IMG/VR virus record: IMGVR_UViG_3300033153_007973
Location: 124,001-188,000 of that record
Strand: one strand, 5' to 3'
Length of the DNA: 64,000 bases
Shown here: positions 22,242-44,235 of the stretch, piece after piece
Layout: the number at the start of each line of letters is the position of its first letter
How positions within the stretch are numbered: position 1 is the first letter of the stretch
The notes under the pieces: generated by a model
Database searches by the model: none
Told to the model about the DNA's origin: nothing
What the model saw: only the letters and a program-made list of their open reading frames with translations
Made by a program: the position numbers and the translations under genes

Positions 22242-24895
22242 TGTCAATTATTAAAGAACTGCAAGAAGATCTGCTTATACAGCATGAGATTGCTGTTTAT
22301 AATCGAGGTGAGACTGACCTGTTGTTAACTAAGCTGCAGGCAATGATTACTCACATCAAAGTATCAGATCTGTTGGGCAAACCCCTATTTCCAGGATATA
22401 CATTTGAGAAACTGGCTGTAGAATCAGACGAAGAACCTAAGAGACCTCTTTTTGCATTACATAATGATAATATAACTGGACTAAGAAATGATACAGATGT
22501 TGTCGATGGTACTATCGATTGGATACAGACCACTATCGATAAGGCAGATAAAGCCAGTGAGAAGATCTTTACATTCATAAAGGACATTGGTGACAAGCTG
22601 AATGCGCTTATAAGACGCGCCAGCACCAGACTTCGTGCAGCAGCTAAGACACTTACAATAGATTTCTCATCTGCTCAGCATATCGATACAACCAATACTA
22701 CAGCACTTATTGATCTAGAGAACCATGTGTGTTCACTAGCTGCAAAGTCTAATGTTGGTCAAGTTAACATTAGAGATCTGGATAAATCCGATGTCACTAT
22801 ATCTTTTGACAACAATGTCCCATACGGTACAGATAAATTACCATATCTTATTCTCAGACCAGCGAGTGATGACATAGTAAATATCACAGCAATAGACTAC
22901 TCTAACTCTCTGAATGAGATTGGTGGTAGTATCCAGATGCGACTTAATAAGGATGGATACAATAAGACCATTAATTCAATCACAATTGAGATGGCTAATC
23001 CAGATGCTGTGACTTTAAGAGCAGAAGCCATTTATGGTACAGGTGATCAAAAAGAGATAGTGCCAGAGTTTCTTGCTGCTACTGGAATTTATACATTTAC
23101 ATTCGAAGGTATTGATGCATCAACGATTGAACTATTCATGCACAAAGTGGGTCCTGATCTAATACTGGATAACGAACGAAGATTTACATTTAGTATCAAG
23201 CGCATCCTACTTGAGAACACAGCATTCCAGAGTGAAGGTATTGTGCAAAGCACAGCCATTTCTGCTGGAATGTCAGTCGGTGATGTGATGCTGAAGGTTG
23301 ATCACTATGTTCCTCGTGGGGCAGATGTTGACTACTTTGTCAGCAGTGATGGAACTCGCTGGATTGGAATAGATCCAATCAATGAAAAGGAATCGCCGCG
23401 GAATGTTATCTCCCTAGGTCTCAAAAGCACAATCTCTATTGATGATATCACTGAGAATGATAGCTCCAGATGGAGCACACTACAGCCACTGGAGGATTAT
23501 GGAAACAAGCCTCTATATAATATTATTGAGAAGGCCGGTTTATCTGACTTTGTCTCTGGTGATGTCTTAGATATCTCTGGTTCTGCAGAGGTTTCTGCTG
23601 ATCTTCCATCCATTCGTCTCATGCGCGGATATGATACATATGCTATAGATAATTCTATCCTTGAGATAAAGACAGAAATAGAGAACGTCAAGTACGTCTT
23701 TACAGATGTAGCAACTGGGGGAGTAGAATCCCTCGAGATCTATACCAGGATAGATAATGAAGCTAAAGTTATCAAGTCAGATCTCACAATCGAACTACAA
23801 TATATACCAGCAAATGATGATATCTACGTTACAGATGGAGTATACAAATTAGATATCATTAGTAGAAATGGGAAAACTCTTCTGTTATCAGGTCCCAGTG
23901 GAGCACAAATTAATACAACAACATATGTGACTTATCCCGTATTGATTAGAACACTCGAACAGAGTGGAAAGTTTGTTCTCGAAGTGGATCCTGATAGCTT
24001 TGAGATGAGACACAGTCCTGATGAAGAAACTATTCCAGATGGTAATTTCTTCGTAGATCCGATTGGAAGACTAGTTAGCCTATCAGAGAATACAGAGATA
24101 GGAACATCCGTGGGAGAAGGAACCACTCAAGCCATTACTGTTAATGTTGGTAGTGGTTCATCCTCATCAACTATGCCAAGAAGAGCCAAAAGAACTGCAT
24201 ATGTCTCCTTCTCTTATACTACCAAATCTAGAGAGAAGTACAACATCTATACAACCAATGTCTTCTACTCTGTAGAAACAGAGATCGTTATTTATCCATT
24301 TACAGAAGAAGAAATCCAGGCTGGGAATCTTCACGTGATCGATGGTATCAATGTCAGCAACATGACAACATATCTGATGAAAAGTGGCTGGCATAACGTA
24401 CGAACGACACAACCATATAAGACTGATCCCAACAATAGACTGGACGTAAATCAACTCACTTCCGATGTATCTATTGCAGGAATCAATCTAGGTGAATACG
24501 AAGAAATGCGAGCATTCGAAAAGCCTTTAAGGCTAGTAAGTACCAAAGCATTGTCAAATCAGGTAGGACCAAAGGACCACAGATCCTTTGCTTATAGCGG
24601 AGGAAAGATCTTATTAAACTATGTTCCAGAATCTCTACCTGAACAGATCAATATATATGAGTCACATGTAAAGGGCATAGATATCATTGGAAAGCGAGCA
24701 ATCTATACTGCAGATGGTGACTTTGATTACTATGAAATCATACCAGACAAATACTCACTGTTCCTCAATACCAAGAGAAAGGAAGAGGACAGTGAAGCAG
24801 TAACCCAGATATACGTAAAAGCAAATCTTACCAGAGAAGGTAAGAAGACATATCAAACTCCGATCCTTAACAGGATCGAGTTATTGTTACTGTAG
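22241..24895 (+). CDS. Baseplate arm-like structural protein (paralog 3)
   Basis: N-terminal helical region, YFVSSDGTRW, C-terminal QTPILNRIEL. Confidence 0.6.
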   Translation: MSIIKELQEDLLIQHEIAVYNRGETDLLLTKLQAMITHIKVSDLLGKPLFPGYTFEKLAVESDEEPKRPLFALHNDNITGLRNDTDVVDGTIDWIQTTIDKADKASEKIFTFIKDIGDKLNALIRRASTRLRAAAKTLTIDFSSAQHIDTTNTTALIDLENHVCSLAAKSNVGQVNIRDLDKSDVTISFDNNVPYGTDKLPYLILRPASDDIVNITAIDYSNSLNEIGGSIQMRLNKDGYNKTINSITIEMANPDAVTLRAEAIYGTGDQKEIVPEFLAATGIYTFTFEGIDASTIELFMHKVGPDLILDNERRFTFSIKRILLENTAFQSEGIVQSTAISAGMSVGDVMLKVDHYVPRGADVDYFVSSDGTRWIGIDPINEKESPRNVISLGLKSTISIDDITENDSSRWSTLQPLEDYGNKPLYNIIEKAGLSDFVSGDVLDISGSAEVSADLPSIRLMRGYDTYAIDNSILEIKTEIENVKYVFTDVATGGVESLEIYTRIDNEAKVIKSDLTIELQYIPANDDIYVTDGVYKLDIISRNGKTLLLSGPSGAQINTTTYVTYPVLIRTLEQSGKFVLEVDPDSFEMRHSPDEETIPDGNFFVDPIGRLVSLSENTEIGTSVGEGTTQAITVNVGSGSSSSTMPRRAKRTAYVSFSYTTKSREKYNIYTTNVFYSVETEIVIYPFTEEEIQAGNLHVIDGINVSNMTTYLMKSGWHNVRTTQPYKTDPNNRLDVNQLTSDVSIAGINLGEYEEMRAFEKPLRLVSTKALSNQVGPKDHRSFAYSGGKILLNYVPESLPEQINIYESHVKGIDIIGKRAIYTADGDFDYYEIIPDKYSLFLNTKRKEEDSEAVTQIYVKANLTREGKKTYQTPILNRIELLLL

Positions 24896-26801: not shown

Positions 26802-29800
26802 ATGGCAGAGAAACGTTTACAACTTCCACTAAACTTTTCAGCTACTCCTCCAGGTGAGGGCTATGTCGGGACTCAGCATCAGAATGATGCGTTCGTTCTT
26901 AAGAATGCTCTAAGAGGGGAGCTCTTTAATTCATATGAGAGTATCTTTGCAGAAATCTATGAATTCTTTGGTGATATTCATTCCGATAAACTTGGTACCA
27001 AGAACAATATTGGTGACGCATTTGAGTCAGTATTCGAACAGCTGAATGCAAGTACTACTACATTTCTAACATATTATTTCTTCGCCCAGATGGGTGGCGG
27101 AATTGTTCTTCCTGATCCTGATCACCAGACAACTAGTGATGAGGAAGCACATGAATTTGATAGTAATAATACATCAACGATCCCTACCATTCAGATGGAG
27201 ATCAGTGGTGGTACCGGCGTACTTGGACTTGGAAAAACAACTAGTGCAGTTGTAGTAGTAGACGATGAAACATCGCATATATTTGATTCTATTGATGAAG
27301 ACATCGTTGGTAATATGACTGCAAGTGATGATACTAATGATTGGACAGGTGGTGAACTTCAAAATGCATCCACTGGCTCATGTACTCTAGATCACCATCA
27401 TATTAAGGGCAACGCTGTTACTCCAGATCTGGGCGCCGGTCCAGTAGCAAGAACTATTATTGGTACAACCGGAACCAGCCCAGCTAAAGTCAACTATACA
27501 TGGAATGATGGTGATTTCGATTTCGATCCTGAGACAGGTGAGATCACCAACTTCTCTGCTAATCCCGCAGCTGTCACATTCTACTATGTATACTTTCAGT
27601 ACAGACGTGATGTGGTTGTCCTCAAACAAGGCACATCCAACAATGATCGAGTACTCATTCGTAAGGGCACTCCTGAGGATGAACTTTCTGAGACCACTAC
27701 TAATATCATTGCGACCACAGATGAGCCCCTCTATGAAGTAGTCATCAGACCAGAGAACGATGAGTTCGACCACTTCGGCACCAGTGGTGCTACCACGGTG
27801 CTACCAGATAATCAGATCGTTGACCTAAGAGTTGGTCGGCGTGATGAAGAAGCCAGAAAAGGCCTCACAAATGGTGTCGTACAGTTCGAACATGATCGAT
27901 TCATGTTCGACTTCCGTGATGACACCATGAAGGCATATGTTAAAGCAATGGACGCGATCGTTGATGGTGCATTGGTACGAACAGAACCTACTATCATTAC
28001 TGTTCCTGCTGCTGATACAGATACCAGATTCGACATAATCCGTACTGCGAAAGACGGTACCGTAGATGTTGTCTCCGGATCATATGGTCTTCCAGTCGTA
28101 CCTGAGGCAGGAGATGGGTATGCCCCTCTTGCCGCAGTAGAGATCCTGTCTGGCCAGACCACTCTGTCAGGTAGCATTAAGCCAACGATGGCATTGCCTG
28201 CACAGAATAAGAGTCTTGGAGCAAACGTTCTATGGACAAAGGACAGACCTCTCTATGGATTTGATGTCCAAGATCAAGCAGACTTTACTCTCTCACTGTC
28301 TGGAATGCCTAACCTAGCTAAGGAAGCTACGAGTCATATTGCATCTATGGAGATCAGTGGCGGCCGTGTACTGATCAATGGAGTGTTTGTAGACGTCCCA
28401 GACATGACATCACCATATAGTTTGAATATGAGCACATGGGATAATGGTGATTATCAATTGATCTGGATGGGAGTCAACAAGTCCACACTTAAGATCGATA
28501 CCAGGGGTCAGAAATATGAATCCACTGAGAGATGGGAAGCACTAAGCCCACTCGGGTGGGAATCATATAAGATGATCAATGGTCAAGGTTCTTGGGATGA
28601 CTTCGTTCCTCTATATGTATTCATAGCAGCAAAGGATACTACATCAAAGATTGCTCTATTGTCTGACGAAAGAGATTTCCATCCAGTCTTGCGCCCACGG
28701 ATTAAGACTGGTATTATTTGGAAGACAAGGATTTATGGAGAGGACTGGTCGAATGAAAGGATCATCCTAAGACATGATATTGGAGTACCTGATTATGCAG
28801 TATTCATTCAGCCCATTGGTGTCTATCCTGCAGATCCTGTAGACCCAGTACCAGCTATCGAATACATCAGTAACAATCAGTGCACAATACATATCTCAAC
28901 GGACAAACGCCTACCCAGTACATTATCTCTCTGGAGTAAAACTGAGGATGTTGCATCAATAACTAATCCTGAAGTTGGTCCCCCCGGTACTATTTTAAAT
29001 TCACCGACCTTCCCTGTAGGAAAGTTTGGGAGGGGAGTGGGAATGGATTATGCTGGATCGGTTTTTAATGGTGTATATCATGCTCTACCGTATCCTGCAT
29101 TCAATACTGATTTAGGATGTTTTGAGGTATGGGTTAAGCCTGTTGGATTTAGTATCGTAGATTCGAAGTCTGTTGGTGGACCTAATGGTGCATATTCAAT
29201 CTTTGAGTGGAAGGTTCCTGGTTCAGGCGGTCACTATGTTTATGTTAGATTTCATACAACTAATGGGCTGGAATGGCTTAATGGCGCCGCGGATCAGTGG
29301 ATATCAGTCATTGCTGCTATTGATATCCCAGATGGTACTTGGGCTCATCTTGCGTTTACTTGGGACAGGAGCCATGCCACGAAGAAACAGCGAGTATTCT
29401 TCAATGGCATAGAAGTAGCTTCACGCAATGTTGCATGGGCAGCTGCGACTGATTCTTCGACACGAGAATTTCGTGTCGGGTATGGTAATGAAGGTGGGAA
29501 TGTGTGGTGGGAAGGTGTTCTTGATAATTATAAGTTCTGGGATTATCAGAAGCTTGATTTCTCGGACAGAAATACCGAGGGATACATTGCTGCTACTGAC
29601 ACGTTGCAAGGTTTCAGGTGGTTAGCAATCGCTGAAACAGATATGATCGAATATGGTACGATCAAAGCCGGTTATGATGCTGATACATCACAGATCCTGC
29701 CGATTAACTTCTCTGACAAAATGTACGATGGAGACGTTACATATCCAGCAATCCTCCTATCTAATATCTATCATGATGATTGGGAGAATGATAAAGCACT

Positions 29801-30218
29801 CACCGCATACCAAGAATCCCTTGGTACAAGTGGTGAGCTCATAGGTATCAGCGCCAGGATTCATGACAATGACATAAGTGGTTATCCTACGCCACATTAC
29901 ATTAACTATGCTATATTCCCAGACTCAATGCTAATGGCTCGCGGGAATAGCGCACTAACGATTGCTGATGCTACCTACGAACAATCAGGCTATGTCAGTG
30001 AAGTAGATGACCTCGATATCAACCGCATAACTCTAGCACAGCACTACGAGTTGGATGATTCCGTCCCTAGCGGCGTCGCAACCAGCATACAGAGAGCAAC
30101 TTCTGGAAACGGTGATCAACTCAGGATCGTCGGAGTTCCAGGAGATTATAATATCAACTGGTTTACACTAAGAGAACCAGTAGCCCCAATTCGTCCATAT
30201 GGACGTCAAGATCTATAG
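26802..30218 (+). CDS. Tail fibre/baseplate attachment protein with inserted LamG (concanavalin A-like) domain
   Basis: Repeated 'R.D.V....G.P......P...PL..V' attachment-like segments. LamG hallmarks GKFG.G, GCFEVWVKP, WAHLAFTWD, RVFFNGIEV and GVLDNYK. Confidence 0.75.
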   Translation: MAEKRLQLPLNFSATPPGEGYVGTQHQNDAFVLKNALRGELFNSYESIFAEIYEFFGDIHSDKLGTKNNIGDAFESVFEQLNASTTTFLTYYFFAQMGGGIVLPDPDHQTTSDEEAHEFDSNNTSTIPTIQMEISGGTGVLGLGKTTSAVVVVDDETSHIFDSIDEDIVGNMTASDDTNDWTGGELQNASTGSCTLDHHHIKGNAVTPDLGAGPVARTIIGTTGTSPAKVNYTWNDGDFDFDPETGEITNFSANPAAVTFYYVYFQYRRDVVVLKQGTSNNDRVLIRKGTPEDELSETTTNIIATTDEPLYEVVIRPENDEFDHFGTSGATTVLPDNQIVDLRVGRRDEEARKGLTNGVVQFEHDRFMFDFRDDTMKAYVKAMDAIVDGALVRTEPTIITVPAADTDTRFDIIRTAKDGTVDVVSGSYGLPVVPEAGDGYAPLAAVEILSGQTTLSGSIKPTMALPAQNKSLGANVLWTKDRPLYGFDVQDQADFTLSLSGMPNLAKEATSHIASMEISGGRVLINGVFVDVPDMTSPYSLNMSTWDNGDYQLIWMGVNKSTLKIDTRGQKYESTERWEALSPLGWESYKMINGQGSWDDFVPLYVFIAAKDTTSKIALLSDERDFHPVLRPRIKTGIIWKTRIYGEDWSNERIILRHDIGVPDYAVFIQPIGVYPADPVDPVPAIEYISNNQCTIHISTDKRLPSTLSLWSKTEDVASITNPEVGPPGTILNSPTFPVGKFGRGVGMDYAGSVFNGVYHALPYPAFNTDLGCFEVWVKPVGFSIVDSKSVGGPNGAYSIFEWKVPGSGGHYVYVRFHTTNGLEWLNGAADQWISVIAAIDIPDGTWAHLAFTWDRSHATKKQRVFFNGIEVASRNVAWAAATDSSTREFRVGYGNEGGNVWWEGVLDNYKFWDYQKLDFSDRNTEGYIAATDTLQGFRWLAIAETDMIEYGTIKAGYDADTSQILPINFSDKMYDGDVTYPAILLSNIYHDDWENDKALTAYQESLGTSGELIGISARIHDNDISGYPTPHYINYAIFPDSMLMARGNSALTIADATYEQSGYVSEVDDLDINRITLAQHYELDDSVPSGVATSIQRATSGNGDQLRIVGVPGDYNINWFTLREPVAPIRPYGRQDL
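28911..29585 (+). repeat. LamG cassette copy 1
   Basis: LPSTLSLWSK...DFSDRNTEGY; homologous to 34698-35369 and 35601-36263 with the same borders. Confidence 0.85.
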
Positions 30219-30229
30219 GAGGATAGAAG

Positions 30230-30475
30230 ATGCCAGACGAAACAACCAAAGTAGAAGTATCCAAAGCAAAGCCATGGTGGAAGAAATTTAAATTAATGGT
30301 TGGTATCGGAACTATTGTTATCGATGCAGTAACAATTCTGGTTTCCCAGCTGGTCACAGATCCTGCAACTAAGGCAATCATCATAAAGATGGTGCCCGTA
30401 GTTACGACAATGGGAATCACACTGATTACCGGACACACGATCACTGATACTGCACGCGAACTCAAAAAGAAATAG
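30230..30475 (+). CDS. Small membrane protein, holin-like
   Basis: 81 aa; KPWWKK N-terminus, two hydrophobic segments, basic C-terminus; AGGAGG RBS. Confidence 0.6.
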   Translation: MPDETTKVEVSKAKPWWKKFKLMVGIGTIVIDAVTILVSQLVTDPATKAIIIKMVPVVTTMGITLITGHTITDTARELKKK

Positions 30476-30511
30476 AACACAGATACACCAATCTATTTCT
30501 AAGGATACCGA

Positions 30512-31798
30512 ATGGGACACAAACAAGAACATCCTAAAGATATCAGTGCATATAAGACACAACTGATTGCACTGGCAAAGGCCCTGAGGCGTGCTCCGAA
30601 CCTCGCAGAAGTTGCTACGAGGTTCGATTTTAGTGTCACGACTGCACACAAAATCGTTGGCAACTCTAGAAAACTAACTAGCTATCTCTCAAGATGGTTG
30701 CAGTTTGACAGAGACGGTAATGTCATCGGGACAAGACCAAAGACAGGAGGAGTACCACAAGAACTGGAAGAAGAGAATCGAGCACTCCGTTCGACAGTTG
30801 ATAATCTTACTAAGAGAGTCCTGAAGATTGACAAAGCCAAGACTCTCGAAGCAGTTCTTGTACGAAAGGTAACTGATGCCATTGGAATGTTGCCTATTAT
30901 TAAGACAGTTCCGAAGCCTCCAATGATAAAGGGTAAGTTGGATGGTGAAGCGATTCTATTACTCTCTGATTCACACTTTGGTGAAGTTGTAGATATGGAA
31001 GAGATGTGCGGAATCAATGAATATAACATGACAGTTGCCGCGAAGCGTATCCAATATCTCGTAGACAATGTCTTTGAGAATCTGGATCCGTTCAAGGTAA
31101 AGAAGCTTCATATCTTCATGCTAGGAGATATGGCAAGCGGAAACATCCATGATGAATTAAGAGAGACAAATAATCCTAACATCGTTGATTGTACCTTCAT
31201 GGGGTCTAGTCTACTTGCACAAGCTACATGTGAGCTTGCTAGTAAGTACGAAATAAGTATTACTGGAGTTCCTGGAAATCATGGACGGATGACAAAGAAG
31301 AAGTCATACAAACAAGCATATGTCAATTGGGACTATGTCATGTACAGAGCTCTCGAGAAGGATCTGAGAGGACAAGAGAATGTAACCACTTCATTCAACC
31401 ATTCGATCTTCAGAATTGTAGATGTCCAAGGCCAGAGATTCCTTATCCTACATGGTGATAACATTCGTGGATGGGCCGGAATCCCTTGGTATGGCATCGA
31501 GAGAGCAACGAAGAAACTGGTTGAGATCCTACAAACTCAGCGAGAAAAGCCTTTCGATCATATATGTTTGGGACACTTCCATTCCGGCGGGCTTATCAAC
31601 CGTACACAAGGTAAGGTATTTGTTAATCCTTCTATCATTGGTGGGAATGAGTACAGTCTGGGAGCTCTGTTCTCAGTCTCAGAACCACAACAGACATTGA
31701 TGCTAGTTAACAAGGACAAAGGTATTCAGTATGAGATGCCACTCAGTCTTAAGAAAGCAGATCTCTTGACTGACAAACAAATGAGATACAAATTATAA
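30512..31798 (+). CDS. Calcineurin-like metallophosphoesterase with N-terminal HTH-like and coiled-coil region
   Basis: All five motifs present: LSDSHFGE, LGDMASG, PGNHG, ILHGD and LGHFH. Confidence 0.85.
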   Translation: MGHKQEHPKDISAYKTQLIALAKALRRAPNLAEVATRFDFSVTTAHKIVGNSRKLTSYLSRWLQFDRDGNVIGTRPKTGGVPQELEEENRALRSTVDNLTKRVLKIDKAKTLEAVLVRKVTDAIGMLPIIKTVPKPPMIKGKLDGEAILLLSDSHFGEVVDMEEMCGINEYNMTVAAKRIQYLVDNVFENLDPFKVKKLHIFMLGDMASGNIHDELRETNNPNIVDCTFMGSSLLAQATCELASKYEISITGVPGNHGRMTKKKSYKQAYVNWDYVMYRALEKDLRGQENVTTSFNHSIFRIVDVQGQRFLILHGDNIRGWAGIPWYGIERATKKLVEILQTQREKPFDHICLGHFHSGGLINRTQGKVFVNPSIIGGNEYSLGALFSVSEPQQTLMLVNKDKGIQYEMPLSLKKADLLTDKQMRYKL

Positions 31799-31829
31799 CA
31801 GATAACTATCTGAGGGAGCACAACTGTAA

Positions 31830-32258
31830 ATGATCAATATATTAGAACAATGGAAGAAGATCTTCCAATACATCTTTGGCACAAATGAGTTCAAGACTGC
31901 TCTCTCTGACAACGAAGACAAAGTCGGAATCTCCAGCAAGAACATGCCAATACTCATATTTTACCCTACGAACACAGGCAGACCTAAAGACTGCTTTGGA
32001 ATTCGTGGGGTTCGGACTCATGTATATGATAATGAACATCACGAGATTCAGATCTGGTACACCAGAAGAAGTCGGGACTACGACTTCTTCACCAAGAGAG
32101 ACAGATTTAGTAGGATCATTATGATTCCACCAACAGAGCATGGTGCAAAAAGAGTTATGCGTTTCAGTCATCTAGTGATGACTGAAAAGAAAGAAACAGC
32201 ATGGGGCTCCGAGATTACTTATATTGGAAGACCTGTACAGGAGGCAAGACATGTTTAA
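31830..32258 (+). CDS. Hypothetical protein
   Basis: 142-aa ORF with upstream GAGGGAG, overlapping the next gene's start. Confidence 0.55.
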   Translation: MINILEQWKKIFQYIFGTNEFKTALSDNEDKVGISSKNMPILIFYPTNTGRPKDCFGIRGVRTHVYDNEHHEIQIWYTRRSRDYDFFTKRDRFSRIIMIPPTEHGAKRVMRFSHLVMTEKKETAWGSEITYIGRPVQEARHV

Positions 32259-33234
32259 TAAAGGAGAAATCCTGAACGATATTCTCAAAAACAAGGCTCT
32301 AATCGATAACATAGGACCAAAGAATTTGCTAATTAATAGCAACTTTGATGTTTGGCAGAGAGAGACGAGTAAGGTCTTGACGACCAGTCTGGTCTATCTT
32401 GCTGACCGCTGGTTAGTGAGCGGAGGTACCAGTGGTGAGTATATGTCGCGGCAGGATTTTACTAACGGGCAGACAGATGTCCCAAACGAACCGAAGCATT
32501 ATCTACGTTTGTCCTTAGATGGTGAGGATGGTAAAATAGCTCAACGAGTAGAAGGTGTGCTGACACTTGCCGGTCAAACTGCGTCTTTGGGTTTCTGGAT
32601 ACGAACATATGGTGCTATTAACTATACGTTAAAGTTGGTGCAGAATTACGGTAGTGGAGGTAGCTCCGCAGACACGACAGTCATACAATCAAGTGTCGCG
32701 ACGATTAACGCCTGGACATACCATACATGCACATTCGATGTTCCAAGTGTATCTGGAAAGACAATATCGGGCGGTGATGATTACCTTGAAATTCTGATAG
32801 AGTTCGCTACAACTTCTGGGAGTATTAGATTTGCACAAGCACAATTAAACGAAGGTGAATTGCTTGACTATCAGCCAAGAACATTCGGAGAAGAGTTACT
32901 AGCTTGTCAGCGATATTACGAAAAGAGTTATGAGATGGATAAATTTGCAACTGATGTTGGAGCTGCTGGTGCAGTCGGTACTATCGGAACAACAAATGGG
33001 CATTGGTCAATTGAAGTTTCTTATAAAGTTAGTAAAAAACCAGGAGGTACGACAATCAAGATTTATGCACCAGCATCCGGCACTCTTGGTCAGGCTCGTA
33101 ATGGTATTGATAACCAGGATACTCCATATGGATTTATAGTTGCTGGAAGTAGTGGTTTTTCTATTACAGCACATACCGGTGGGGATGCTGATGATCAAAT
33201 TTATGCTCATTTCACTGCTGATGCTGAATTATAA
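32251..33234 (+). CDS. Tail fibre protein with carbohydrate-binding-like domain
   Basis: KNLLINSNFDVWQR, YLADRW, IAQRVE, AQLNEG and TFGEELLACQRYYEKSY are typical fibre motifs. Start moved to ATG 32251, which follows AGGAGG. Confidence 0.8.
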   Translation: MFNKGEILNDILKNKALIDNIGPKNLLINSNFDVWQRETSKVLTTSLVYLADRWLVSGGTSGEYMSRQDFTNGQTDVPNEPKHYLRLSLDGEDGKIAQRVEGVLTLAGQTASLGFWIRTYGAINYTLKLVQNYGSGGSSADTTVIQSSVATINAWTYHTCTFDVPSVSGKTISGGDDYLEILIEFATTSGSIRFAQAQLNEGELLDYQPRTFGEELLACQRYYEKSYEMDKFATDVGAAGAVGTIGTTNGHWSIEVSYKVSKKPGGTTIKIYAPASGTLGQARNGIDNQDTPYGFIVAGSSGFSITAHTGGDADDQIYAHFTADAEL

Positions 33235-33245
33235 GGAGAAATGAA

Positions 33246-33719
33246 ATGGCTAAACATTATATTGTTGTTGATAATGATGACTTGGTAATCGATAGTTTCT
33301 CAGATGCATTCAGGAAACCATCTGGTGGAGAGATAGAAGTTAACTCAAATGGCGGCAGACATTTTAACTTGAACCTGCGTGATAAGAATACGAATCCTCG
33401 TCTTAAATGGAATGGATCTGCTATCGTTGAGCGAACAGAAGATGAACGCGATCCAATGGATAACCTGAAACAACGCATGAAAGATCGTGTATTCAAAGCT
33501 GGTATACATATTATGCAGAAGACACAATGGAAAGTCGACCGTCATCGCGAAGAATTAGAGCTCAGTATTGCAACCACGTTGACACCAACACAGTATACAA
33601 CACTTCTAACACAGCGCAAAACAATACGGGACAAAATCATTCAATTTTATCAGCAGATCACTGATCTATCAGATAGGCAGCTAGTAAAAGACTTTGCCGC
33701 GGACTTCTCAGGAGAATAA
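33246..33719 (+). CDS. Tail fibre assembly chaperone-like protein
   Basis: Follows a fibre gene; LKWNGSAIVERT and KTQWKVDRHREELEL...LTPTQYTTLLTQRKTIRD pattern. Confidence 0.7.
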   Translation: MAKHYIVVDNDDLVIDSFSDAFRKPSGGEIEVNSNGGRHFNLNLRDKNTNPRLKWNGSAIVERTEDERDPMDNLKQRMKDRVFKAGIHIMQKTQWKVDRHREELELSIATTLTPTQYTTLLTQRKTIRDKIIQFYQQITDLSDRQLVKDFAADFSGE

Positions 33720-33720
33720 T

Positions 33721-34017
33721 ATGCCAGACCCAGCAACAACAAATGGACTCGGTAATATACTCGGCATAAGTGGTCTTGCCGGCGGTAGTCTTGGAACCGG
33801 CATCCTACTCAAGATCATCTTCGATTGGCTAAAGGGGAAGAAGAACGGCAATGGCGATTCAGATAAGATCTTATCTAAGCTTGAAGAGATCAAGACTGAG
33901 ATCCATGATACTAGAATGAGCAATGACCGCACAGAACAGGCTGTAAATAAGCTTGTATCACAATCTGCGGCCACAGATGTCAAAATACAGGCGATTCTGG
34001 ACAAGAATCACGAGTAA
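33721..34017 (+). CDS. Membrane-anchored coiled-coil protein (holin/XhlA-like)
   Basis: N-terminal Gly-rich hydrophobic helix followed by a coiled coil; ATG 33721 after GGAG. Confidence 0.5.
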   Translation: MPDPATTNGLGNILGISGLAGGSLGTGILLKIIFDWLKGKKNGNGDSDKILSKLEEIKTEIHDTRMSNDRTEQAVNKLVSQSAATDVKIQAILDKNHE

Positions 34018-34018
34018 G

Positions 34019-34047
34019 TTGACGCCCCTAAATAGATATGATATAAT
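34019..34047 (+). promoter_or_regulatory. sigma70-type promoter with extended -10
   Basis: TTGACG (34019-34024), 17 nt, TGnTATAAT (TATAAT 34042-34047); AAGGAG RBS before ATG 34074. Confidence 0.8.
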
Positions 34048-34073
34048 ATATTAGCTAAACAAGGAGCATACAT

Positions 34074-34319
34074 ATGGCACCACTCGATAATCCTACAGAT
34101 ATGGAAGAACTGAGAAGGTTCTTCAAGTCAAATAGCGGCAATGCTAATAGTGGTGAAGGCGATATTTTGACCGCTTTTGATCCCAAGCTTACTATCACCA
34201 GCAGTGGTGGCAATACAACCCAGATCGATGCTGAACTCGGGGGACATATTGCGAGAAAGAGATTCACATACCCAGATGCCAACACACAGATTGTGTGGCC
34301 CTGGGAATTCGTGAGTTAA
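34074..34319 (+). CDS. Small hypothetical protein
   Basis: 81-aa ORF with promoter and RBS. Confidence 0.6.
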   Translation: MAPLDNPTDMEELRRFFKSNSGNANSGEGDILTAFDPKLTITSSGGNTTQIDAELGGHIARKRFTYPDANTQIVWPWEFVS

Positions 34320-34331
34320 CAGGAGCTTGAC

Positions 34332-36743
34332 ATGGGCAGCATTATAGGTCACAAAGTCAATAATACTATTTTCGGCATAGCCACAAAGGGCTATGTCGAT
34401 GATGCCATATCTGGCATTGCATCAACTGCATATAACTATGTATCCACCTGGGACGCTACTACCAACACTCCAGCACTAGCTAGTGGTGCTGGTACCAAGG
34501 GAGATGTCTACTACGTGAATGTCGGTGGTAGCACGAACTTAGACGGAATCACAGACTGGGTAGCGGGCGACTCTGCTGCATTCAATGGTTCTGTCTGGAC
34601 CAAGTGGGATCATACCGATCAGATCACCAGTATATTCGGTCGACAAGGTATTATTGAAGCAGTAAGCGGAGACTATGATGCCGCCGAGATCTCTTCTCTT
34701 CCAGACACATTAAACTACTGGAGCAAGATGGGGTCTACTATAGAGATTACCAATCCAGTGGTTGGCCCGGTTACGACATTGGACGCGACAGTTGTATACG
34801 AAACTGGCAAGTTTGATAATGGCGTGCGGGGTACAGTAGCAGATGAGGAAAAACCCATATCGTTCCCTACTATATCTCCATCTTTCGATTTTGCACAAGG
34901 CTGTATTGAAATGTGGATCCGTCCCGTAGGATACAATATTGTTAATGGTATTAATGATGCCGGCGATGGCGAAGGCAAGTATTTATGGCAGTGGATGAGT
35001 CCAGCACCACATAACTATGTGCACTATTTTAAATTCGGCGTGATTGGCATCGGTTGGCAAACCAATTCTGCTGCCGGTCAAACTCATTGGGATGATGAAC
35101 TTCCTGGATTAGATATTGCTGATGGTGAACTTGCTCATATTGCATTAGTCTGGGATCGCACACACCTCACCAAGAAACGTAGAGTTTACCTGAATGGAAT
35201 TGAAGTTGGATCAAACAATGACCAGTGGAGTGATGAGGACATGACTGGCGCTACGATGACTATAGGAAGCGCCACTGGTGGAACTCGTATTCTCGAAGGC
35301 CAGATGGATAATATGAAATGGTGGGATTTTGCACAAACTGATTTCTCAGGAAAAGACATAGAAGGATTCGCCACTGTTGCTAATCATCTCGCCAGTAGCG
35401 AGCTTCACAGAGAGATCAATGATTCAGAATATGCTGATACTGATTTATGGAGTGCTGACCAGATAAGTGGACATGTAGCAACTGAGATCGGATCTATTAG
35501 TGATGCTGAAGATTCAGTTAGCGGTGTTCTCCTGGGGGACGGAACCGGAGCATATTCCGAGGCAGATGCAGGTGACCTTCCTGTCACCATACAGGGAAGT
35601 CCTCCAAGCACATTAAATTACTGGAGTAAGATGGGTACTCCCGGAGAGATCACCAGTCCGGAGGTCGGTCCTACTACAACTCTGACTGCGACAGTTGCAT
35701 ACGAAACTGGAAAGTTTGACAATGGTGCTAGAACTACAGTGGTGGATGAGGCAAAAGACATATCATTTCCAACAGTATCTCCTTCGTTTGATCATGCACA
35801 AGGTTGTATCGAGATGTGGATCAGGCCTGTTGGATTTAATATCGTTAATGGTGCATATGATGCCGGTGGTCCACCGAAGTTTCTGTGGTATTGGAACAGT
35901 GCATATGAGCAACATTTTAGATTCCAAGGAAGTGGCGGTGGTATTTATTGGAATCTTAATGATGCTGGTGGATCATATGCATGGTCTGGTGAACTTCCTG
36001 GATTAGATATTGCTGATGGTGAGTTAGCACATATTGCATTCGTATGGGATCGCACACATAGCACAAAGAAACGTAGAATCTATCTGAATGGTGTAGAAGT
36101 CGGCTCAGATAATACAGCATGGGTCGATGAGGACATGACTGCTGGGACAATGTATATTGGAACAGATACTGGTGGGTATACAGGTTTTTACGGCCAGATG
36201 GATAATATGAAATGGTGGGACTTCGCGCAGACTGATTTCTCTAGTAGAGATACAGAAGGATTTAGTTCAATAGGCGATGCCCAAACTTACCTCGATGATA
36301 ATACTGCAGGTATTACAGCAAACGTCGCAAGCATTGCAACAAATGCTGCTTACATAGATACCGTCAGTGGTGATGTCAATACGCATTCTGCTGACTCAGA
36401 CAAGCACTCTCAGGTATATAGCTTCTTCATTCCTGGTGATGCCGTGTCAGGCACGGCAATCCAGGAGGCGGAAGTTGCCTTCTCTGGAGATATCTCTCTG
36501 GTAAGAGCTACAGCTAAGGGACCAGTAGGTGGGAATCTGGATATCGATATTGACCTAAATGACACAACAATCTTTACCGACCAGGATAAACGACCACAAA
36601 TCATCTCTGGATCTCTGTCTGATATCAGTGATACACCAGATATTATAACTGTTGTACCTGGTGATATCCTGGGCGTGAACGTGGATGCTGTCGATCCTGT
36701 AGATCCTGGAAACAAGGTAAAAATAGCCATCGTCGTGGTATAA
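34332..36743 (+). CDS. Tail fibre/adhesin with two tandem LamG domains
   Basis: ATKGYVD and WDATTNTPALASG.GTKGDVYYV...DGITDW fibre motifs, two LamG repeats, one LWSADQISG repeat and a C-terminal beta-sandwich. Confidence 0.8.
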   Translation: MGSIIGHKVNNTIFGIATKGYVDDAISGIASTAYNYVSTWDATTNTPALASGAGTKGDVYYVNVGGSTNLDGITDWVAGDSAAFNGSVWTKWDHTDQITSIFGRQGIIEAVSGDYDAAEISSLPDTLNYWSKMGSTIEITNPVVGPVTTLDATVVYETGKFDNGVRGTVADEEKPISFPTISPSFDFAQGCIEMWIRPVGYNIVNGINDAGDGEGKYLWQWMSPAPHNYVHYFKFGVIGIGWQTNSAAGQTHWDDELPGLDIADGELAHIALVWDRTHLTKKRRVYLNGIEVGSNNDQWSDEDMTGATMTIGSATGGTRILEGQMDNMKWWDFAQTDFSGKDIEGFATVANHLASSELHREINDSEYADTDLWSADQISGHVATEIGSISDAEDSVSGVLLGDGTGAYSEADAGDLPVTIQGSPPSTLNYWSKMGTPGEITSPEVGPTTTLTATVAYETGKFDNGARTTVVDEAKDISFPTVSPSFDHAQGCIEMWIRPVGFNIVNGAYDAGGPPKFLWYWNSAYEQHFRFQGSGGGIYWNLNDAGGSYAWSGELPGLDIADGELAHIAFVWDRTHSTKKRRIYLNGVEVGSDNTAWVDEDMTAGTMYIGTDTGGYTGFYGQMDNMKWWDFAQTDFSSRDTEGFSSIGDAQTYLDDNTAGITANVASIATNAAYIDTVSGDVNTHSADSDKHSQVYSFFIPGDAVSGTAIQEAEVAFSGDISLVRATAKGPVGGNLDIDIDLNDTTIFTDQDKRPQIISGSLSDISDTPDIITVVPGDILGVNVDAVDPVDPGNKVKIAIVVV
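34698..35369 (+). repeat. LamG cassette copy 2
   Basis: LPDTLNYWSK...DFSGKDIEGF. Confidence 0.9.
35601..36263 (+). repeat. LamG cassette copy 3
   Basis: PPSTLNYWSK...DFSSRDTEGF. Shares identical nt blocks with copy 2, e.g. gaacttcctggattagatattgctgatggtga. Confidence 0.9.
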
Positions 36744-38152: not shown

Positions 38153-41100
38153 ATGGCACAACAGATACAAATTAGGCGGGACACTGCAAGCAATTGGACA
38201 AGCGTCAATCCAACCCTAGCTGTTGGTGAATACGGATACGAGACCGACACCGACAAGTTAAAGCTTGGGGATGGCTCCACTGCTTGGAACTCTCTCGGAT
38301 ACATGCTCGCCCCAGTCTTGATCTCTTCTCCGATATCCGGAGAAGTTCTGAAGTATGATGGCACATACTGGGTAAATGATCAGGACATAAGCGGCACTGG
38401 CGCAATTGCTGGACACGAGTCGATCTATGATCACGATGCATATGATCAGCACCTAGTCAGCGGAGAACTCCACAGGCAGATCAACGATTCTGCTTACGGA
38501 GATACTGATCTATGGAGCGCCGAACAGATAAGTGGTGAGCTGGTAAGTAAGTCTGATACAACACATCTTCATGATGATAGATATTATACTGAGACTGAAG
38601 CCAATGGTCTCTTCGAGCCATCAGGTCACACACATGATGAATATGCAGAATCGGGACACATACATGACAACAGATATTATACAGAAGCAGAAGCCGATGG
38701 CTTATTCTCCGCCTCGGGTCACCTCCACGACGATAGATATTATACCGAAACTGAAGCGGACGGACTCTTTGAAGCGTCGGGAGCAGTAGCTGCTCACGAA
38801 TCAGCATACGATCACGATGACTTTGCACTGTCAGGACATGCTCATGCTATCAATGATCTCTCTGATGTCACGATCGGTTCTCCCGTATCAGGAGAGATTC
38901 TCAAGTATAATGGATCTCAATGGACCAATGGAGAGGATGTCAGTGGTGGCACCGGATCAGTGGATGCTCACGAGGCATCATATGATCACGACTTATATGA
39001 TACACACATAGCGAGTGGCGAAATCCACCGCACCATCGATGATGCCGGCTACGGATCGATCGATCTATGGAGTGCCGAGCAGATTAGTGGTGAATTGGTA
39101 AGTAAGTCTGACACTGGGCACAGCCACAATGACCTCTATTACACAGAGGCTGAGGCAGATGGTCTCTTTGCAGCTTCAGGGCATGTCCACGATGACATTT
39201 ATGAAACGTCAGGCGCAGTGGCGGGACACGAAGCCGCTTGGGACCACGATAACTTCGCGTTGTCGGGTCATAATCACGATGCTGACTACGCGGCATTGGA
39301 CCATGATCATGATGCAGATTACGAAGCATCAGGAGCTGTCACTGGTCATGAGTTTGCCTACGACCATGAGGCATATGATGACCATCTAGCAAGCGGTGAG
39401 CTTCATAGAACTATAGATGATGCAGGATATGCCGATACAGATCTGTGGAGTGCACAGCAAATCAGTGGACAATTACAACAGAGCTTCTTGATTCAGATAT
39501 CGGCAGGAATGGATGCACCCAACACCACGAATCAATATCTGAGGGGGCCTGGAGACATACCGATGAACCTCGGGGGTTTCTCTCTTCCGTTTGATTCCAC
39601 GCTAGCTGGAATAACAATGGTGGGAGGAGCAAATAACGATATATGGAATACTGAGGTTAGGAAGAATGATGGTATAACTGTTCTAGCTTGGCTCAATATT
39701 ACGAATGCATATGAAAATCATGATTTCACTCAGAATGTTGACTTCGATGCCGGGGATAGAGTACAGTTATACATGAGCGGAACAGCAGTGAATAGGCCCT
39801 CAGTGACTGCGTTCTTTACGAGGAGAATCGGCTAATGGCATTCAGAATAACTACCACAGGGGCACCAGATCCTGTTGTATTCGACGACTTGGGAGCAAGA
39901 AGTTTCTCACACCCGACTACCGGCTACGATCTTCTACTGGAGTTCTCACAGGATGAAATCAACAACTCTGTTGATATTCAGGACGCAATTGATATCAGTG
40001 GAATTACCGTTGTAGACGAGTTTGGTAATTCTATAACATCAGTTAGCAATGAAAATATCATGTCGAGAACCACATATGATATGAATCAAAATGGTGTGGT
40101 CGACGATGTAGATAGTATTGGTGGTCTTGCCTCTGGTGATCTTGCTCTTGCTGGCCACACACATAACGATCTATATGAAGTGTCTGGTGCTGTAGATACA
40201 CATGAAGTGGCTTGGAATCATGATAGCTTTGCTCTATCCAGTCATGATCATGATGCTGATTATGAGGTATCTGGCGCAGTTGCATCCCATGAAATCACAC
40301 ATGATCATGACAGCTATGATACGCACCTTGCCAGCGGAGAACTACACAGAGAAATTAATGATTCAGGATACGATGCTACCGATCTCTGGAGTGCACAGAA
40401 GATAAGCGGTGAACTCGTAAACAGTGATCAACTCAGTGAGCTGAATGATGTAACTATATCTGCACCTGTATCAGGAGAACTTCTTACCTATAATGGAACC
40501 GAATGGATAGATGGTGGCAATGCCTTTATAGATGGAAATCTGGATGTCAGTGGAGATCTGACTGGCATTACTCTATATGGAGATGGATCGAACATCACTA
40601 ACATCGGTACCTCAGTATCCAATGCTGTAACAATCGATGCAAGAGTAAATGAAGCTGGTGGCATTACCAAGGGACAAGCAGTATACATCAACGGATCCAC
40701 AGGCATGACACCTCAGGTGGGTCTGTGTGATAATACAGACCCAGCAAAAACGGGCATTTATGCATTAGCAGCTGAGACAAGAACTCATGGCCAAAGCATT
40801 CTTATCAGACGAGAAGGCATACTGAATGGTGTCAATACAAATAGTTGGAATACAGGCGACAAACTGTATCCCTCTACTGCGGGTGCTCTAACCAATGTGA
40901 TACCCACAGGAGCAGTCAAAAGTGCTGGTGTGGTCGTAACCAAACACATATCACTTGGAGTAATCCTTGTTTCGACAGGGATCAAGGATTGGTATGTCTC
41001 TGCCGCTAGTGGGCAGGATATAGATCTCCGAATGGGAGACAACGCTGGTGCAACCCATATTGCATTTGAGAACTACAATGATGATGAAGTTGCACACATT

Positions 41101-44100: not shown

Positions 44101-44235
44101 GGATATGACACACATCTCGCTGATGATACCAAGCATCGAACGATAAATGACTCAGGGTATGGAGACACCGATCTCTGGTCGGCGAACCAGATCAGTGGAG
44201 AACTTGCGGGCAAGGCAGATACAGGACATGGACAT
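37480..44235 (+). repeat. Dispersed His/Asp-rich fibre-shaft repeat modules across three genes (plus one copy at ~35380-35480)
   Basis: Recurring modules GHxHDDRYYTExE, AVxxHESAW/YDHDxF, HREINDSGYGxTDLWSAxxISGEL and TTGNPHxLDAxDVGADPAG, with synonymous divergence between copies. Confidence 0.9.
38153..39835 (+). CDS. Tail fibre with Mtd_N (major tropism determinant N-terminal) domain and His/Asp repeats
   Basis: IQIRRDTASNWTSVNPTLAVGEYGYETDTDKLKLGDGSTAWNSLGY is the canonical Mtd_N/hyaluronidase-N motif; C-terminal beta-sandwich head. Confidence 0.85.
   Translation: MAQQIQIRRDTASNWTSVNPTLAVGEYGYETDTDKLKLGDGSTAWNSLGYMLAPVLISSPISGEVLKYDGTYWVNDQDISGTGAIAGHESIYDHDAYDQHLVSGELHRQINDSAYGDTDLWSAEQISGELVSKSDTTHLHDDRYYTETEANGLFEPSGHTHDEYAESGHIHDNRYYTEAEADGLFSASGHLHDDRYYTETEADGLFEASGAVAAHESAYDHDDFALSGHAHAINDLSDVTIGSPVSGEILKYNGSQWTNGEDVSGGTGSVDAHEASYDHDLYDTHIASGEIHRTIDDAGYGSIDLWSAEQISGELVSKSDTGHSHNDLYYTEAEADGLFAASGHVHDDIYETSGAVAGHEAAWDHDNFALSGHNHDADYAALDHDHDADYEASGAVTGHEFAYDHEAYDDHLASGELHRTIDDAGYADTDLWSAQQISGQLQQSFLIQISAGMDAPNTTNQYLRGPGDIPMNLGGFSLPFDSTLAGITMVGGANNDIWNTEVRKNDGITVLAWLNITNAYENHDFTQNVDFDAGDRVQLYMSGTAVNRPSVTAFFTRRIG

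What the first reader, a model, noticed from the sequence alone, without database searches (positions are those of the whole stretch)
28911..36263. A ~220-aa LamG cassette with the same borders occurs three times in two fibre genes, with a variable centre
Copies at 28911-29585, 34698-35369 and 35601-36263 all start xP[S/D]TLxxWSK and end DFSxxxxEG[F/Y], with unrelated flanks. Copy 1 appears to split a host domain, whose last strand FRWLAI resumes after it, and looks more T-rich than its surroundings. The framework is conserved while the central strands differ strongly (WQWMSPAPHNYVHYFKF / WYWNSAYEQHFRFQ / FEWKVPGSGGHYVYVRF). This suggests a portable lectin module diversified at its binding face.
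Basis: partly seen in the sequence, partly recalled or inferred. Interest (0 to 1): 0.6.

Follow-up and report, generated by a model that had tools for sequence, protein, structure and literature searches.

The report
LamG sugar-binding modules in phage tail genes
A 234-kb phage carries three copies of a common lectin-like (LamG) domain in two tail-cluster genes, one inserted into a loop that two related phages have without it; this is ordinary domain shuffling of a widespread module, not a new mechanism.

Summary

Copies 2 and 3 are a tandem pair (70% aa identity). Copy 1 is only about 37% identical to them, no closer than to stand-alone homologues from other metagenomes.

Copy 1 is a true presence/absence insert. 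Two syntenic orthologues (P0003, L008) read straight through the same loop with 4 residues in place of 232.

The "same borders" are the conserved first and last strands of a large LamG subfamily. That subfamily has 2611 hits and occurs as stand-alone proteins and as N-terminal, C-terminal, internal and tandem domains.

The variable centre is also family-wide: it is the least conserved segment in 70 of 72 related pairs. It is rich in aromatic residues. Between copies 2 and 3 its dN/dS is 0.85, against 0.15 elsewhere.

The nearest solved relative is AbnA domain 4, a carbohydrate-binding module (CBM) that binds sugar in a Trp-rich concave cleft.

The genome has no reverse transcriptase, and the copies share no long identical DNA at their borders, so no dedicated cassette mechanism is indicated. 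The "one binding face" idea could not be tested because no coordinates were available.

Verdict: a new member of a known kind, of modest interest.

The parts
26802..30218 (+). Gene P0001 (1138 aa), an uncharacterised large protein of the tail/baseplate gene cluster; host of LamG copy 1
   Evidence: ORF and translation. The only Pfam hit is Laminin_G_3 at aa 762-915. There is no PHROG hit. Orthologues are P0003 (50-60% identity, syntenic) and L008.
28902..29597 (+). The 232-aa segment (aa 701-932: linker DKR + cassette + linker IAAT) that is present in P0001 and absent from both orthologues
   Evidence: BLASTP of P0001 against P0003 aligns aa 2-700 and 933-1138 and skips 701-932. The three-way alignment with L008 shows TLSE/SASE in its place.
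28911..29585 (+). LamG cassette copy 1 (P0001 aa 704-928)
   Evidence: AF2 gives pLDDT mostly above 90 over this part. Foldseek finds ConA-like/LamG CBMs.
29160..29297 (+). Variable centre of copy 1 (aa 787-832; profile columns 91-140), four to five consecutive beta-strands
   Evidence: Family conservation profile. DSSP strands of model residues 190-236, which are P0001 aa 789-835.
34332..36743 (+). Gene P0002 (803 aa). Order of parts: tail-fibre/minor-tail N-terminal domain, LamG copy 2, linker with a His-rich fibre motif, LamG copy 3, C-terminal domain
   Evidence: PHROG minor tail protein at aa 25-120 and phrog_27064 at aa 661-802. tblastn hits to minor tail and tail fibre genes cover only aa 26-131.
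34698..35369 (+). LamG cassette copy 2 (P0002 aa 123-346)
34962..35105 (+). Variable centre of copy 2 (aa 211-258)
35382..35489 (+). About 36-aa fibre motif (HLASSELHREINDSEYADTDLWSADQISG...) in the linker between copies 2 and 3. The same motif occurs in two neighbouring fibre genes
   Evidence: Regex scan finds 8 occurrences in 3 genes.
35601..36263 (+). LamG cassette copy 3 (P0002 aa 424-644), tandem paralogue of copy 2
   Evidence: 70% aa identity to copy 2. The two are sister in the tree, SH-aLRT 99.
35865..35999 (+). Variable centre of copy 3 (aa 512-556)

Best explanation
The three segments are members of a large, promiscuous subfamily of LamG / concanavalin-A-like beta-sandwich domains. 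These domains most likely act as non-catalytic glycan-binding modules (type-B-CBM-like) on the tail apparatus of a 234-kb phage.

They arrived by ordinary domain shuffling:
- In P0002, one module was duplicated in tandem. The two copies are now 70% identical and dS is about 1.
- In P0001, a module of the same subclade sits in a short surface loop between two beta-strands of a small C-terminal beta-sandwich. Related phages have only the loop.

The shared 'borders' are the conserved first and last strands of the fold. In LamG domains these lie side by side, which is why the module tolerates insertion into a hairpin loop.

Specificity is probably set by an aromatic-rich central block of about 47 residues (4-5 strands and their turns). 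This block is hypervariable throughout the family, so the three modules probably recognise different sugars and give multivalent auxiliary adhesion to host surface glycans.

Shown: domain identity, fold, copy relationships, presence/absence polymorphism, family-wide architecture and the variability pattern. Inferred: sugar binding, role in adsorption, that the centre is the binding surface, and that the event was an insertion rather than a deletion.
For: - Pfam Laminin_G_3 passes the cut-off in all three copies.
- The AF2 model of copy 1 has pLDDT mostly above 90.
- Foldseek hits are CBM and lectin domains: AbnA domain 4 (TM 0.70 by target), NanA CBM40, sialidase lectin domains and a cyanophage tailspike.
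- A profile of 60 cassettes hits AbnA domain 4 at E 2.5e-10. That domain binds arabinopentaose in a Trp-rich concave cleft with micromolar Kd (PMC9110388).
- Empty sites: P0003 (918 aa, same gene order) and L008 both lack aa 701-932.
- The subfamily is widespread: 2611 representatives at E<=1e-3. Among the best hits there are 118 further full-length instances: 18 stand-alone, 24 N-terminal, 19 C-terminal and 57 internal.
- Partner domains include T4-gp10-like baseplate connectors, tail fibre, Big_5 and F5/8-C.
- The border motifs are conserved across the family.
- Tree: copies 2 and 3 are sister (SH-aLRT 99). Copy 1 lies in the same small clade as stand-alone P0010 and P0017 (SH-aLRT 91), unresolved.
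- The centre is the least conserved segment family-wide and is aromatic-enriched (25-27% against 11-14% in copies 2/3; family p=5e-15).
- Copy 2 against copy 3: dN/dS is 0.85 in the centre and 0.15 elsewhere, Fisher p=3e-4.
- CBM insertions in phage tail proteins are an established kind, for example evolved Dit (PMC6669499).
Against: - No binding data exist, and no host is known.
- An elevated dN/dS of 0.85 is also what relaxed constraint would give.
- Without model coordinates the variable residues could not be placed on a face.
- Only three members of the P0001 family are known. The two without the module are each other's closest relatives (70% against 62-64%), so parsimony cannot tell gain from loss.
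- The fold of the host domain is poorly predicted (pLDDT about 40-55).
- P0001 has no direct annotation as a fibre. Its structural role is inferred from gene neighbourhood and weak Atlas leads.
Confidence: 0.7

Rival explanations
1. A dedicated diversification or cassette-exchange system acts on the module. Candidates are a diversity-generating retroelement, site-specific shuffling, or homologous recombination through the conserved borders. Such a system would move or rewrite the cassette between the two genes.
For: Border peptides are conserved and the centre is variable. An Mtd_N-type fibre gene lies nearby. A 33-nt exact match between copies 2 and 3 lies directly 3' of the centre, and pS is somewhat lower in the centre (0.42 against 0.60, p=0.12). 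These last two could reflect a small conversion tract.
Against: - There is no reverse transcriptase anywhere in the 234-kb genome.
- Differences include indels and are not adenine-specific.
- Nucleotide identity at the borders (0.72-0.83) is not above that of the rest of the cassette.
- The longest exact word shared between copy 1 and copies 2/3 is 14 nt.
- dS is saturated between copy 1 and the others.
- The border motifs are conserved at the protein level in hundreds of unrelated proteins.
Confidence: 0.04
2. The modules are structural or protein-protein interaction domains (spacers, assembly or trimer-packing elements) and not lectins. On this reading the variable centre reflects only relaxed constraint on surface strands.
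For: LamG/ConA-like folds also mediate protein-protein contacts. The dN/dS of 0.85 in the centre does not exceed 1. No conserved sugar- or Ca-binding residues were identified. The nearly invariant residues look structural.
Against: - The nearest sequence and fold relatives with known function bind carbohydrate.
- The centre is aromatic-enriched, as in CBM binding platforms.
- The modules are dispensable for the host protein, since orthologues lack one. This fits an accessory adhesin better than a structural element.
- Partner domains elsewhere are receptor-binding proteins.
Confidence: 0.15
3. The P0001 presence/absence is a precise deletion in the lineage of P0003 and L008, not an insertion in the lineage of this phage.
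For: P0003 and L008 are closer to each other (70%) than to P0001 (62-64%) and share indels. One loss in their common ancestor is therefore as parsimonious as one gain.
Against: - The module is a promiscuous domain found free-standing and in many contexts.
- Copy 1 has a mildly atypical synonymous composition for its gene.
- A precise deletion that leaves a clean 4-residue hairpin loop twice over is less likely than a loop insertion, but it cannot be excluded.
- No outgroup was found in any collection.
Confidence: 0.25

Closest known systems
Carbohydrate-binding-module insertions and decorations of phage tail proteins ('evolved' Dit, BppA, TpeX and neck passage CBMs of lactococcal siphophages; PMC6669499 and the Hayes et al. 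2018 paper cited there)
   Same: An accessory sugar-binding beta-sandwich is inserted internally in, or appended to, a tail or baseplate protein. Close relatives of the host protein lack it. Several such modules occur per virion.
   Different: The module here is a LamG/Laminin_G_3 type, not a BppA-type CBM. The host protein is not a Dit: no Dit or galectin signature was found. The phage is an uncultured 234-kb virus with no close relatives in GenBank phages. Binding is untested.
AbnA domain 4 of Geobacillus stearothermophilus arabinanase (PDB 5HON), a type-B CBM with a ConA-like fold (PMC9110388)
   Same: It is the best solved relative by sequence profile (E 2.5e-10) and by fold (TM 0.70 by target). 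It is a two-sheet beta-sandwich. Its central strands, which align to the variable centre, are aromatic-rich.
   Different: Identity is only 16-18%. AbnA D4 lacks the N-terminal LW.K strand region and the C-terminal DFSDR..EG tail: the profile match covers positions 31-215 of 232. It is part of an enzyme, not a virion.
Pfam PF13385 Laminin_G_3 (concanavalin A-like lectin/glucanase superfamily)
   Same: All three copies score above the gathering threshold.
   Different: The Pfam model covers only about 150 of the about 225 residues. A classical short Laminin_G_3 also occurs in the genome at window 45003-45431 and is not detected by the cassette query.
Diversity-generating retroelement targets (for example Mtd of Bordetella phage BPP-1)
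   Same: A receptor-binding protein with a conserved scaffold and a variable ligand-binding patch. An Mtd_N domain is present in a neighbouring fibre gene.
   Different: There is no reverse transcriptase in the genome and no template/variable repeat pair. The fold is LamG, not C-type lectin.

Membership tests
Pfam PF13385 Laminin_G_3 / ConA-like superfamily | Profile HMM score above the curated gathering cut-off (27.6 bits) | tested here: met
   P0001 scores 50.5 bits and P0002 scores 91.7 bits over two stretches. The genome scan gives 53.3, 47.5 and 60.4 bits.
Pfam PF13385 Laminin_G_3 / ConA-like superfamily | Two-sheet beta-sandwich (jelly-roll) fold superposable on solved members | tested here: met
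   The AF2 model of copy 1 has pLDDT mostly above 90 and is all-beta. Foldseek gives 318 PDB matches at E<=1e-3, with ConA-like CBM and lectin domains at the top.
Type-B carbohydrate-binding module (AbnA domain 4-like) | Detectable homology to a module with demonstrated glycan binding | tested here: met
   Profile of 60 cassettes against 5hon_A: E 2.5e-10. Foldseek: TM 0.70 by target. Binding by AbnA D4 is shown in PMC9110388.
Type-B carbohydrate-binding module (AbnA domain 4-like) | Aromatic-lined concave cleft that binds a glycan chain | tested here: inconclusive
   The centre is aromatic-enriched: 22-27% against 11-16% in the three copies. No coordinates were available to show a cleft, and there is no binding assay.
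'Evolved' tail protein with an internal CBM insertion (evolved-Dit kind) | Accessory module lies inside the host protein, and orthologues lacking it are otherwise collinear | tested here: met
   P0003 and L008 lack aa 701-932, with 50-64% identity on both sides and conserved gene order.
'Evolved' tail protein with an internal CBM insertion (evolved-Dit kind) | Host protein is a Dit (distal tail protein), with the insertion in its galectin-like domain and a BppA-type CBM | tested here: not met
   No Dit, galectin or BppA family was found in P0001 or P0003 by Pfam, PHROGs or PDB sequence search. The module is LamG. This is therefore the same principle, but the gene is not a member of that family.
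Diversity-generating retroelement target | Cognate reverse transcriptase and a template repeat in the genome | tested here: not met
   PF00078 has no match in the complete 234-kb record. The control genomes gave matches.
H-type lectin domain (PF09458), as the host domain split by copy 1 | Profile match, or a confident six-stranded beta-sandwich fold match | tested here: inconclusive
   There is no Pfam hit even at E<=5. The ESM Atlas model of P0003 629-915 matches an H_lectin-rich cluster at TM 0.67. The AF2 model has low confidence (pLDDT 40-66) but shows six strands, with the insertion point between strands 5 and 6. Foldseek finds nothing significant.

The most novel reading that the evidence does not exclude
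This LamG subfamily may be a previously undescribed, very widespread plug-in receptor-binding scaffold of phages. It would have a fixed frame whose adjacent termini allow it to be dropped into loops, ends or separate ORFs. It would also have a hypervariable, aromatic-rich block of about 47 residues that is exchanged or evolves rapidly to retarget glycan specificity. The family-wide collapse of identity in the centre (for example 2% against 60% in one pair) would then reflect segment swapping. On this reading the module is a natural, engineerable specificity cassette, and the three copies here give one virion three different sugar specificities.
Probability: 0.25. Interest if true: 0.55.

Novelty: new member of a known kind. 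Interest (0 to 1): 0.33.

Why it matters
This locus gives a clean natural example of domain insertion into a phage tail protein, with filled and empty alleles. The example comes from an uncultured 234-kb phage, well outside the lactic-acid-bacteria phages where such CBM insertions were defined.

It also delineates a LamG subfamily with conserved terminal strands and a family-wide hypervariable aromatic centre. That information is useful for annotating receptor-binding proteins in metagenomic phages. It could also guide experiments on specificity swapping between phages and laboratory hosts.

It does not reveal a new mechanism.

Tried and rejected
- **GenBank phages.** Megablast and tblastn of both genes, of the cassette alone and of the host C-terminal part found nothing. 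The one exception was the N-terminal fibre domain of P0002.
- **More P0001 relatives, to polarise gain against loss.** Word-index searches with P0001 and with P0003 found only each other. IMG/VR scans found only an identical 120-kb contig of the same virus. The JGI metagenome scan gave L008. The GTDB genome scan gave nothing.
- **P0002 relatives.** No full-length relatives were found, so copy-number variation of copies 2/3 could not be examined.
- **Read mapping.** No sequencing run was listed for the stretch. Recombinants and microdiversity remain untested.
- **DGR.** Rejected, because the genome has no reverse transcriptase.
- **Host domain as an internal repeat.** The idea was that the host C-terminal region is two homologous repeats, so that FRWLAIAE could be equated with INYAIFPD. 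hhalign gave probability 0.5%, so this was rejected.
- **AF2 of the host domain.** Runs with 2-4 sequences were too poor to use (pLDDT below 50). Foldseek on that model gave only generic Ig-like noise.
- **Mapping variable residues to a face.** Not possible, because model coordinates are not returned by the tools.
- **T-richness as proof of foreign origin.** Rejected as proof. Part of it is amino-acid composition, and the synonymous part is only modestly significant.


Full report
**Context.** The window is bases 124001-188000 of a complete 234,008-bp IMG/VR virus record with direct terminal repeats. The region of interest lies in a run of + strand structural genes:
- a virion structural protein at 22241-24895
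- P0001 at 26802-30218
- a tail fibre protein at 32224-33234
- P0002 at 34332-36743, with a minor-tail/tail-fibre N-terminal domain
- an Mtd_N-type fibre at 38153-39835
- a 1714-aa beta-helix protein at 39835-44979
- a LamG_3 plus NHL-like-repeat protein at 44979-46406

Neither P0001 nor P0002 has a close relative among 50,697 GenBank phage records. A 120-kb IMG/VR contig is 100% identical over at least 27 kb, so it is the same virus.

**The observation.**
- All three begin xP[S/D]TLxxWSK and end DFSxxxxEG[F/Y].
- All three pass the Pfam Laminin_G_3 threshold.
- They are the only matches to the cassette in the genome, at E 1e-41 to 1e-160.
- Copies 2 and 3 are 70% identical in protein. Copy 1 is 36-38% identical to either.
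- The sequences immediately outside the cassettes show no significant similarity.
- The T-richness of copy 1 is real. Part of it is compositional and part is synonymous, and it is only modestly significant.

**Copy 1 is a presence/absence insert.**
- A word-index search of 5.8 billion proteins found one relative of P0001: P0003, 918 aa, from ENA assembly ERZ27252253.
- BLASTP aligns P0001 aa 2-700 to P0003 aa 5-708 at 50% identity, and aa 933-1138 to aa 713-918 at 60%. It skips P0001 aa 701-932.
- The P0003 contig has the same downstream gene order: 81 aa, a 433-aa metallophosphoesterase, then 145 aa.
- A JGI metagenome scan gave a second relative, L008 (SDBV01380433.1). Its 279 C-terminal residues likewise run ...AIEYTSNNQCTIHMDT-SASE-DSLKGFRWLAIAE... 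with no LamG, and it is followed by the 80-aa gene.
- In this phage, then, a 232-aa block (DKR + cassette + IAAT; window 28902-29597) replaces a 4-residue loop.

**Direction of the event.** This is not settled. The two empty orthologues are each other's closest relatives (70% against 62-64%). No outgroup was found. I favour insertion, at about 3:1, because the module is demonstrably promiscuous elsewhere.

**The host domain.**
- AF2 with only 2-4 homologues gave low confidence. Even so, it predicts six strands between P0003 aa 641 and 724, with the insertion point in the turn between strand 5 (ECIIHM) and strand 6 (KGFRWIAIA).
- The ESM Atlas's own model of P0003 629-915 matches clusters rich in H-type lectin domains at TM 0.67.
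- Pfam, PDB sequence search and Foldseek gave nothing significant.
- My attempt to show an internal repeat failed.
- The statement that the cassette splits a small beta-sandwich just before its last strand is therefore plausible but weakly supported.

**The borders are domain limits.** A profile of the three copies was scored against 1.84 billion representative proteins. It found 2611 proteins at E<=1e-3 and 476 at E<=1e-10.
- Among the 150 best hits there are 121 full-length matches in 79 proteins. Excluding this phage, 18 are stand-alone proteins of at most 270 aa, 24 are N-terminal, 19 are C-terminal and 57 are internal, often in tandem.
- One stand-alone example, P0010 (227 aa), is a complete ORF between other genes.
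- Across the family the first strand reads L.LW[NS]K[LM][GE]S..[EQ][IV]T and the end reads DN.K.[WY][DN]YAKTDFSDR..EG.
- Partner domains differ widely: T4 gp10-like baseplate connector, tail fibre, Big_5, Gly_rich_2 and F5/8 type C.
- None of these proteins resembles P0001 or P0002 outside the cassette.

**Relationship of the copies.**
- In a maximum-likelihood tree of 85 cassettes, copies 2 and 3 are sisters (SH-aLRT 99).
- Copy 1 falls in the same small clade together with the stand-alone proteins P0010 and P0017 (support 91), and the order within that clade is unresolved.
- By BLAST, copy 1 is about as close to P0014, P0024 and P0030 (34-37%) as it is to copies 2/3 (37%).
- Synonymous divergence is saturated between copy 1 and the others, and dS is about 1.07 between copies 2 and 3.
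- The longest exact DNA word shared by copy 1 and copies 2/3 is 14 nt.

P0002 therefore carries an old tandem duplication limited to the domain. Copy 1 is an old, separate placement of a related module, not a recent copy.

**The variable centre.**
- Between copies 2 and 3, profile columns 94-140 have pN 0.374 and pS 0.417 (dN/dS 0.85). The rest has pN 0.161 and pS 0.600 (dN/dS 0.15). Fisher p=3e-4 for the ratio of nonsynonymous to synonymous differences. Twenty-codon windows inside the centre reach 1.2-2.0.
- The same block is the least conserved part of the whole family: 0.6-0.9 bits per column against 1.7-3.0 at the ends. Identity among the three copies correlates with family conservation (r about 0.4, p about 1e-10).
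- In 70 of 72 cassette pairs of 40-98% identity, the centre is less conserved than the rest, by 0.33 on average (the pairs are not independent).
- The centre is 32-68 residues long and is enriched in aromatic residues: 25-27% against 11-14% in copies 2/3, and 19.5% against 14.4% family-wide, p=5e-15.
- In the AF2 model it comprises four to five consecutive strands.
- Within those strands the conserved and variable residues alternate. An example is L-W-x-W-x in YLWQWMS / FLWYWNS / SIFEWKV. This is what one exposed sheet face would give (inference).

**Function by homology.**
- The best solved relative is domain 4 of the arabinanase AbnA: profile E 2.5e-10 and Foldseek TM 0.70 by target.
- That domain is a type-B CBM. 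It holds arabinopentaose in a Trp-rich concave cleft and binds arabinan with micromolar Kd (PMC9110388).
- In the HMMER alignment, the Trp-rich AbnA segment (HWISLVPQGWDGNTMLWSGSSPWYDGRTFW) aligns to the variable centre.
- Other fold neighbours are the sialic-acid-binding CBM40 of NanA, sialidase lectin domains, the lectin-like subdomains of clostridial neurotoxin binding regions, and a cyanopodophage tailspike.
- This supports, but does not prove, that the centre is the sugar-binding surface.

**Mechanisms excluded.**
- There is no reverse transcriptase in the genome, so a DGR is excluded.
- There are no repeats or elevated DNA identity at the borders.
- The only oddity is a 33-nt exact match between copies 2 and 3 directly 3' of the centre. 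Chance expectation is about 0.01 at 72% identity. It could be a small conversion tract or a strongly constrained PGLDIADGE segment.

**Comparison with what is known.**
- Accessory carbohydrate-binding modules inserted into or appended to phage tail proteins are well established. Examples are evolved Dit, BppA, TpeX and neck passage proteins (PMC6669499).
- This locus works like those. It is not a member of the Dit/BppA families, because the module is LamG and the host protein is an orphan.
- It is a new member of a known kind.
- The mildly novel aspects are three: the clean filled/empty allele set in a large uncultured phage, the definition of a LamG subfamily with extra conserved terminal strands, and the family-wide hypervariable aromatic centre.

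**Constraints and operators' notes.**
- No run was listed by the look-up of sequencing runs, so no read mapping was done.
- No alternative genetic code was needed.
The neurotoxin entries above are fold neighbours only.

Noticed in passing
window 44979-46406 (+), LamG_3 at 45003-45431: A fourth LamG_3 domain lies in a third gene (475 aa). It is of the classical short type (...IDDLRIYNRVLPADEV) and gives the best Pfam score in the genome (78 bits). It is followed by about six NHL-like 'GKIY(I/V)..D..N.RV.VW' repeats. It lacks the cassette borders and was not found by the cassette query.
   Followed up: partly
window 35406 (P0002 linker), 38471, 40345, 41218, 41500, 41989, 42439, 44134: A second shared module: a His-rich motif of about 36 aa, H(L/I)xxxxxHR(E/Q/T)INDSxYxxTDLWSAxxISGEL. 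It occurs 8 times in three fibre genes, six of them in the 1714-aa beta-helix protein. One occurrence lies exactly in the linker between LamG copies 2 and 3.
   Followed up: partly
window 35096-35128 and 35990-36022: A 33-nt exact identity between copies 2 and 3 lies immediately 3' of the variable centre, in cassettes that are otherwise about 72% identical. It may be a small gene-conversion tract or a strongly constrained segment.
   Followed up: partly
window 30512-31798 (+): A metallophosphoesterase / SbcD-like exonuclease gene (phrog_284, E 2e-49) sits inside the tail-fibre cluster. It is syntenic in the P0003 contig.
   Followed up: no
window 38153-39835 and 39835-44979 (+): Two further receptor-binding candidates follow P0002: an Mtd_N-domain fibre (560 aa) and a 1714-aa protein with a right-handed beta-helix (aa 1175-1323). 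The virion probably carries several distinct receptor-binding proteins.
   Followed up: no
proteins P0020 (332-580) and P0042 (256-505); P0014 and P0024: Cassette pairs from other metagenomes show near-complete replacement of the centre with a conserved frame: 2% against 60% identity in the first pair, and 28% against 70% in the second. This may reflect segment swapping or very fast evolution of the centre across the family.
   Followed up: partly
L006 (IMGVR_UViG_3300049057_000245) 3324-3620: The only relative of the P0002 C-terminal domain (aa 693-787, 37% identity) lies in an unrelated 34-kb viral contig. The C-terminal domain is therefore a separately shuffled module too.
   Followed up: no
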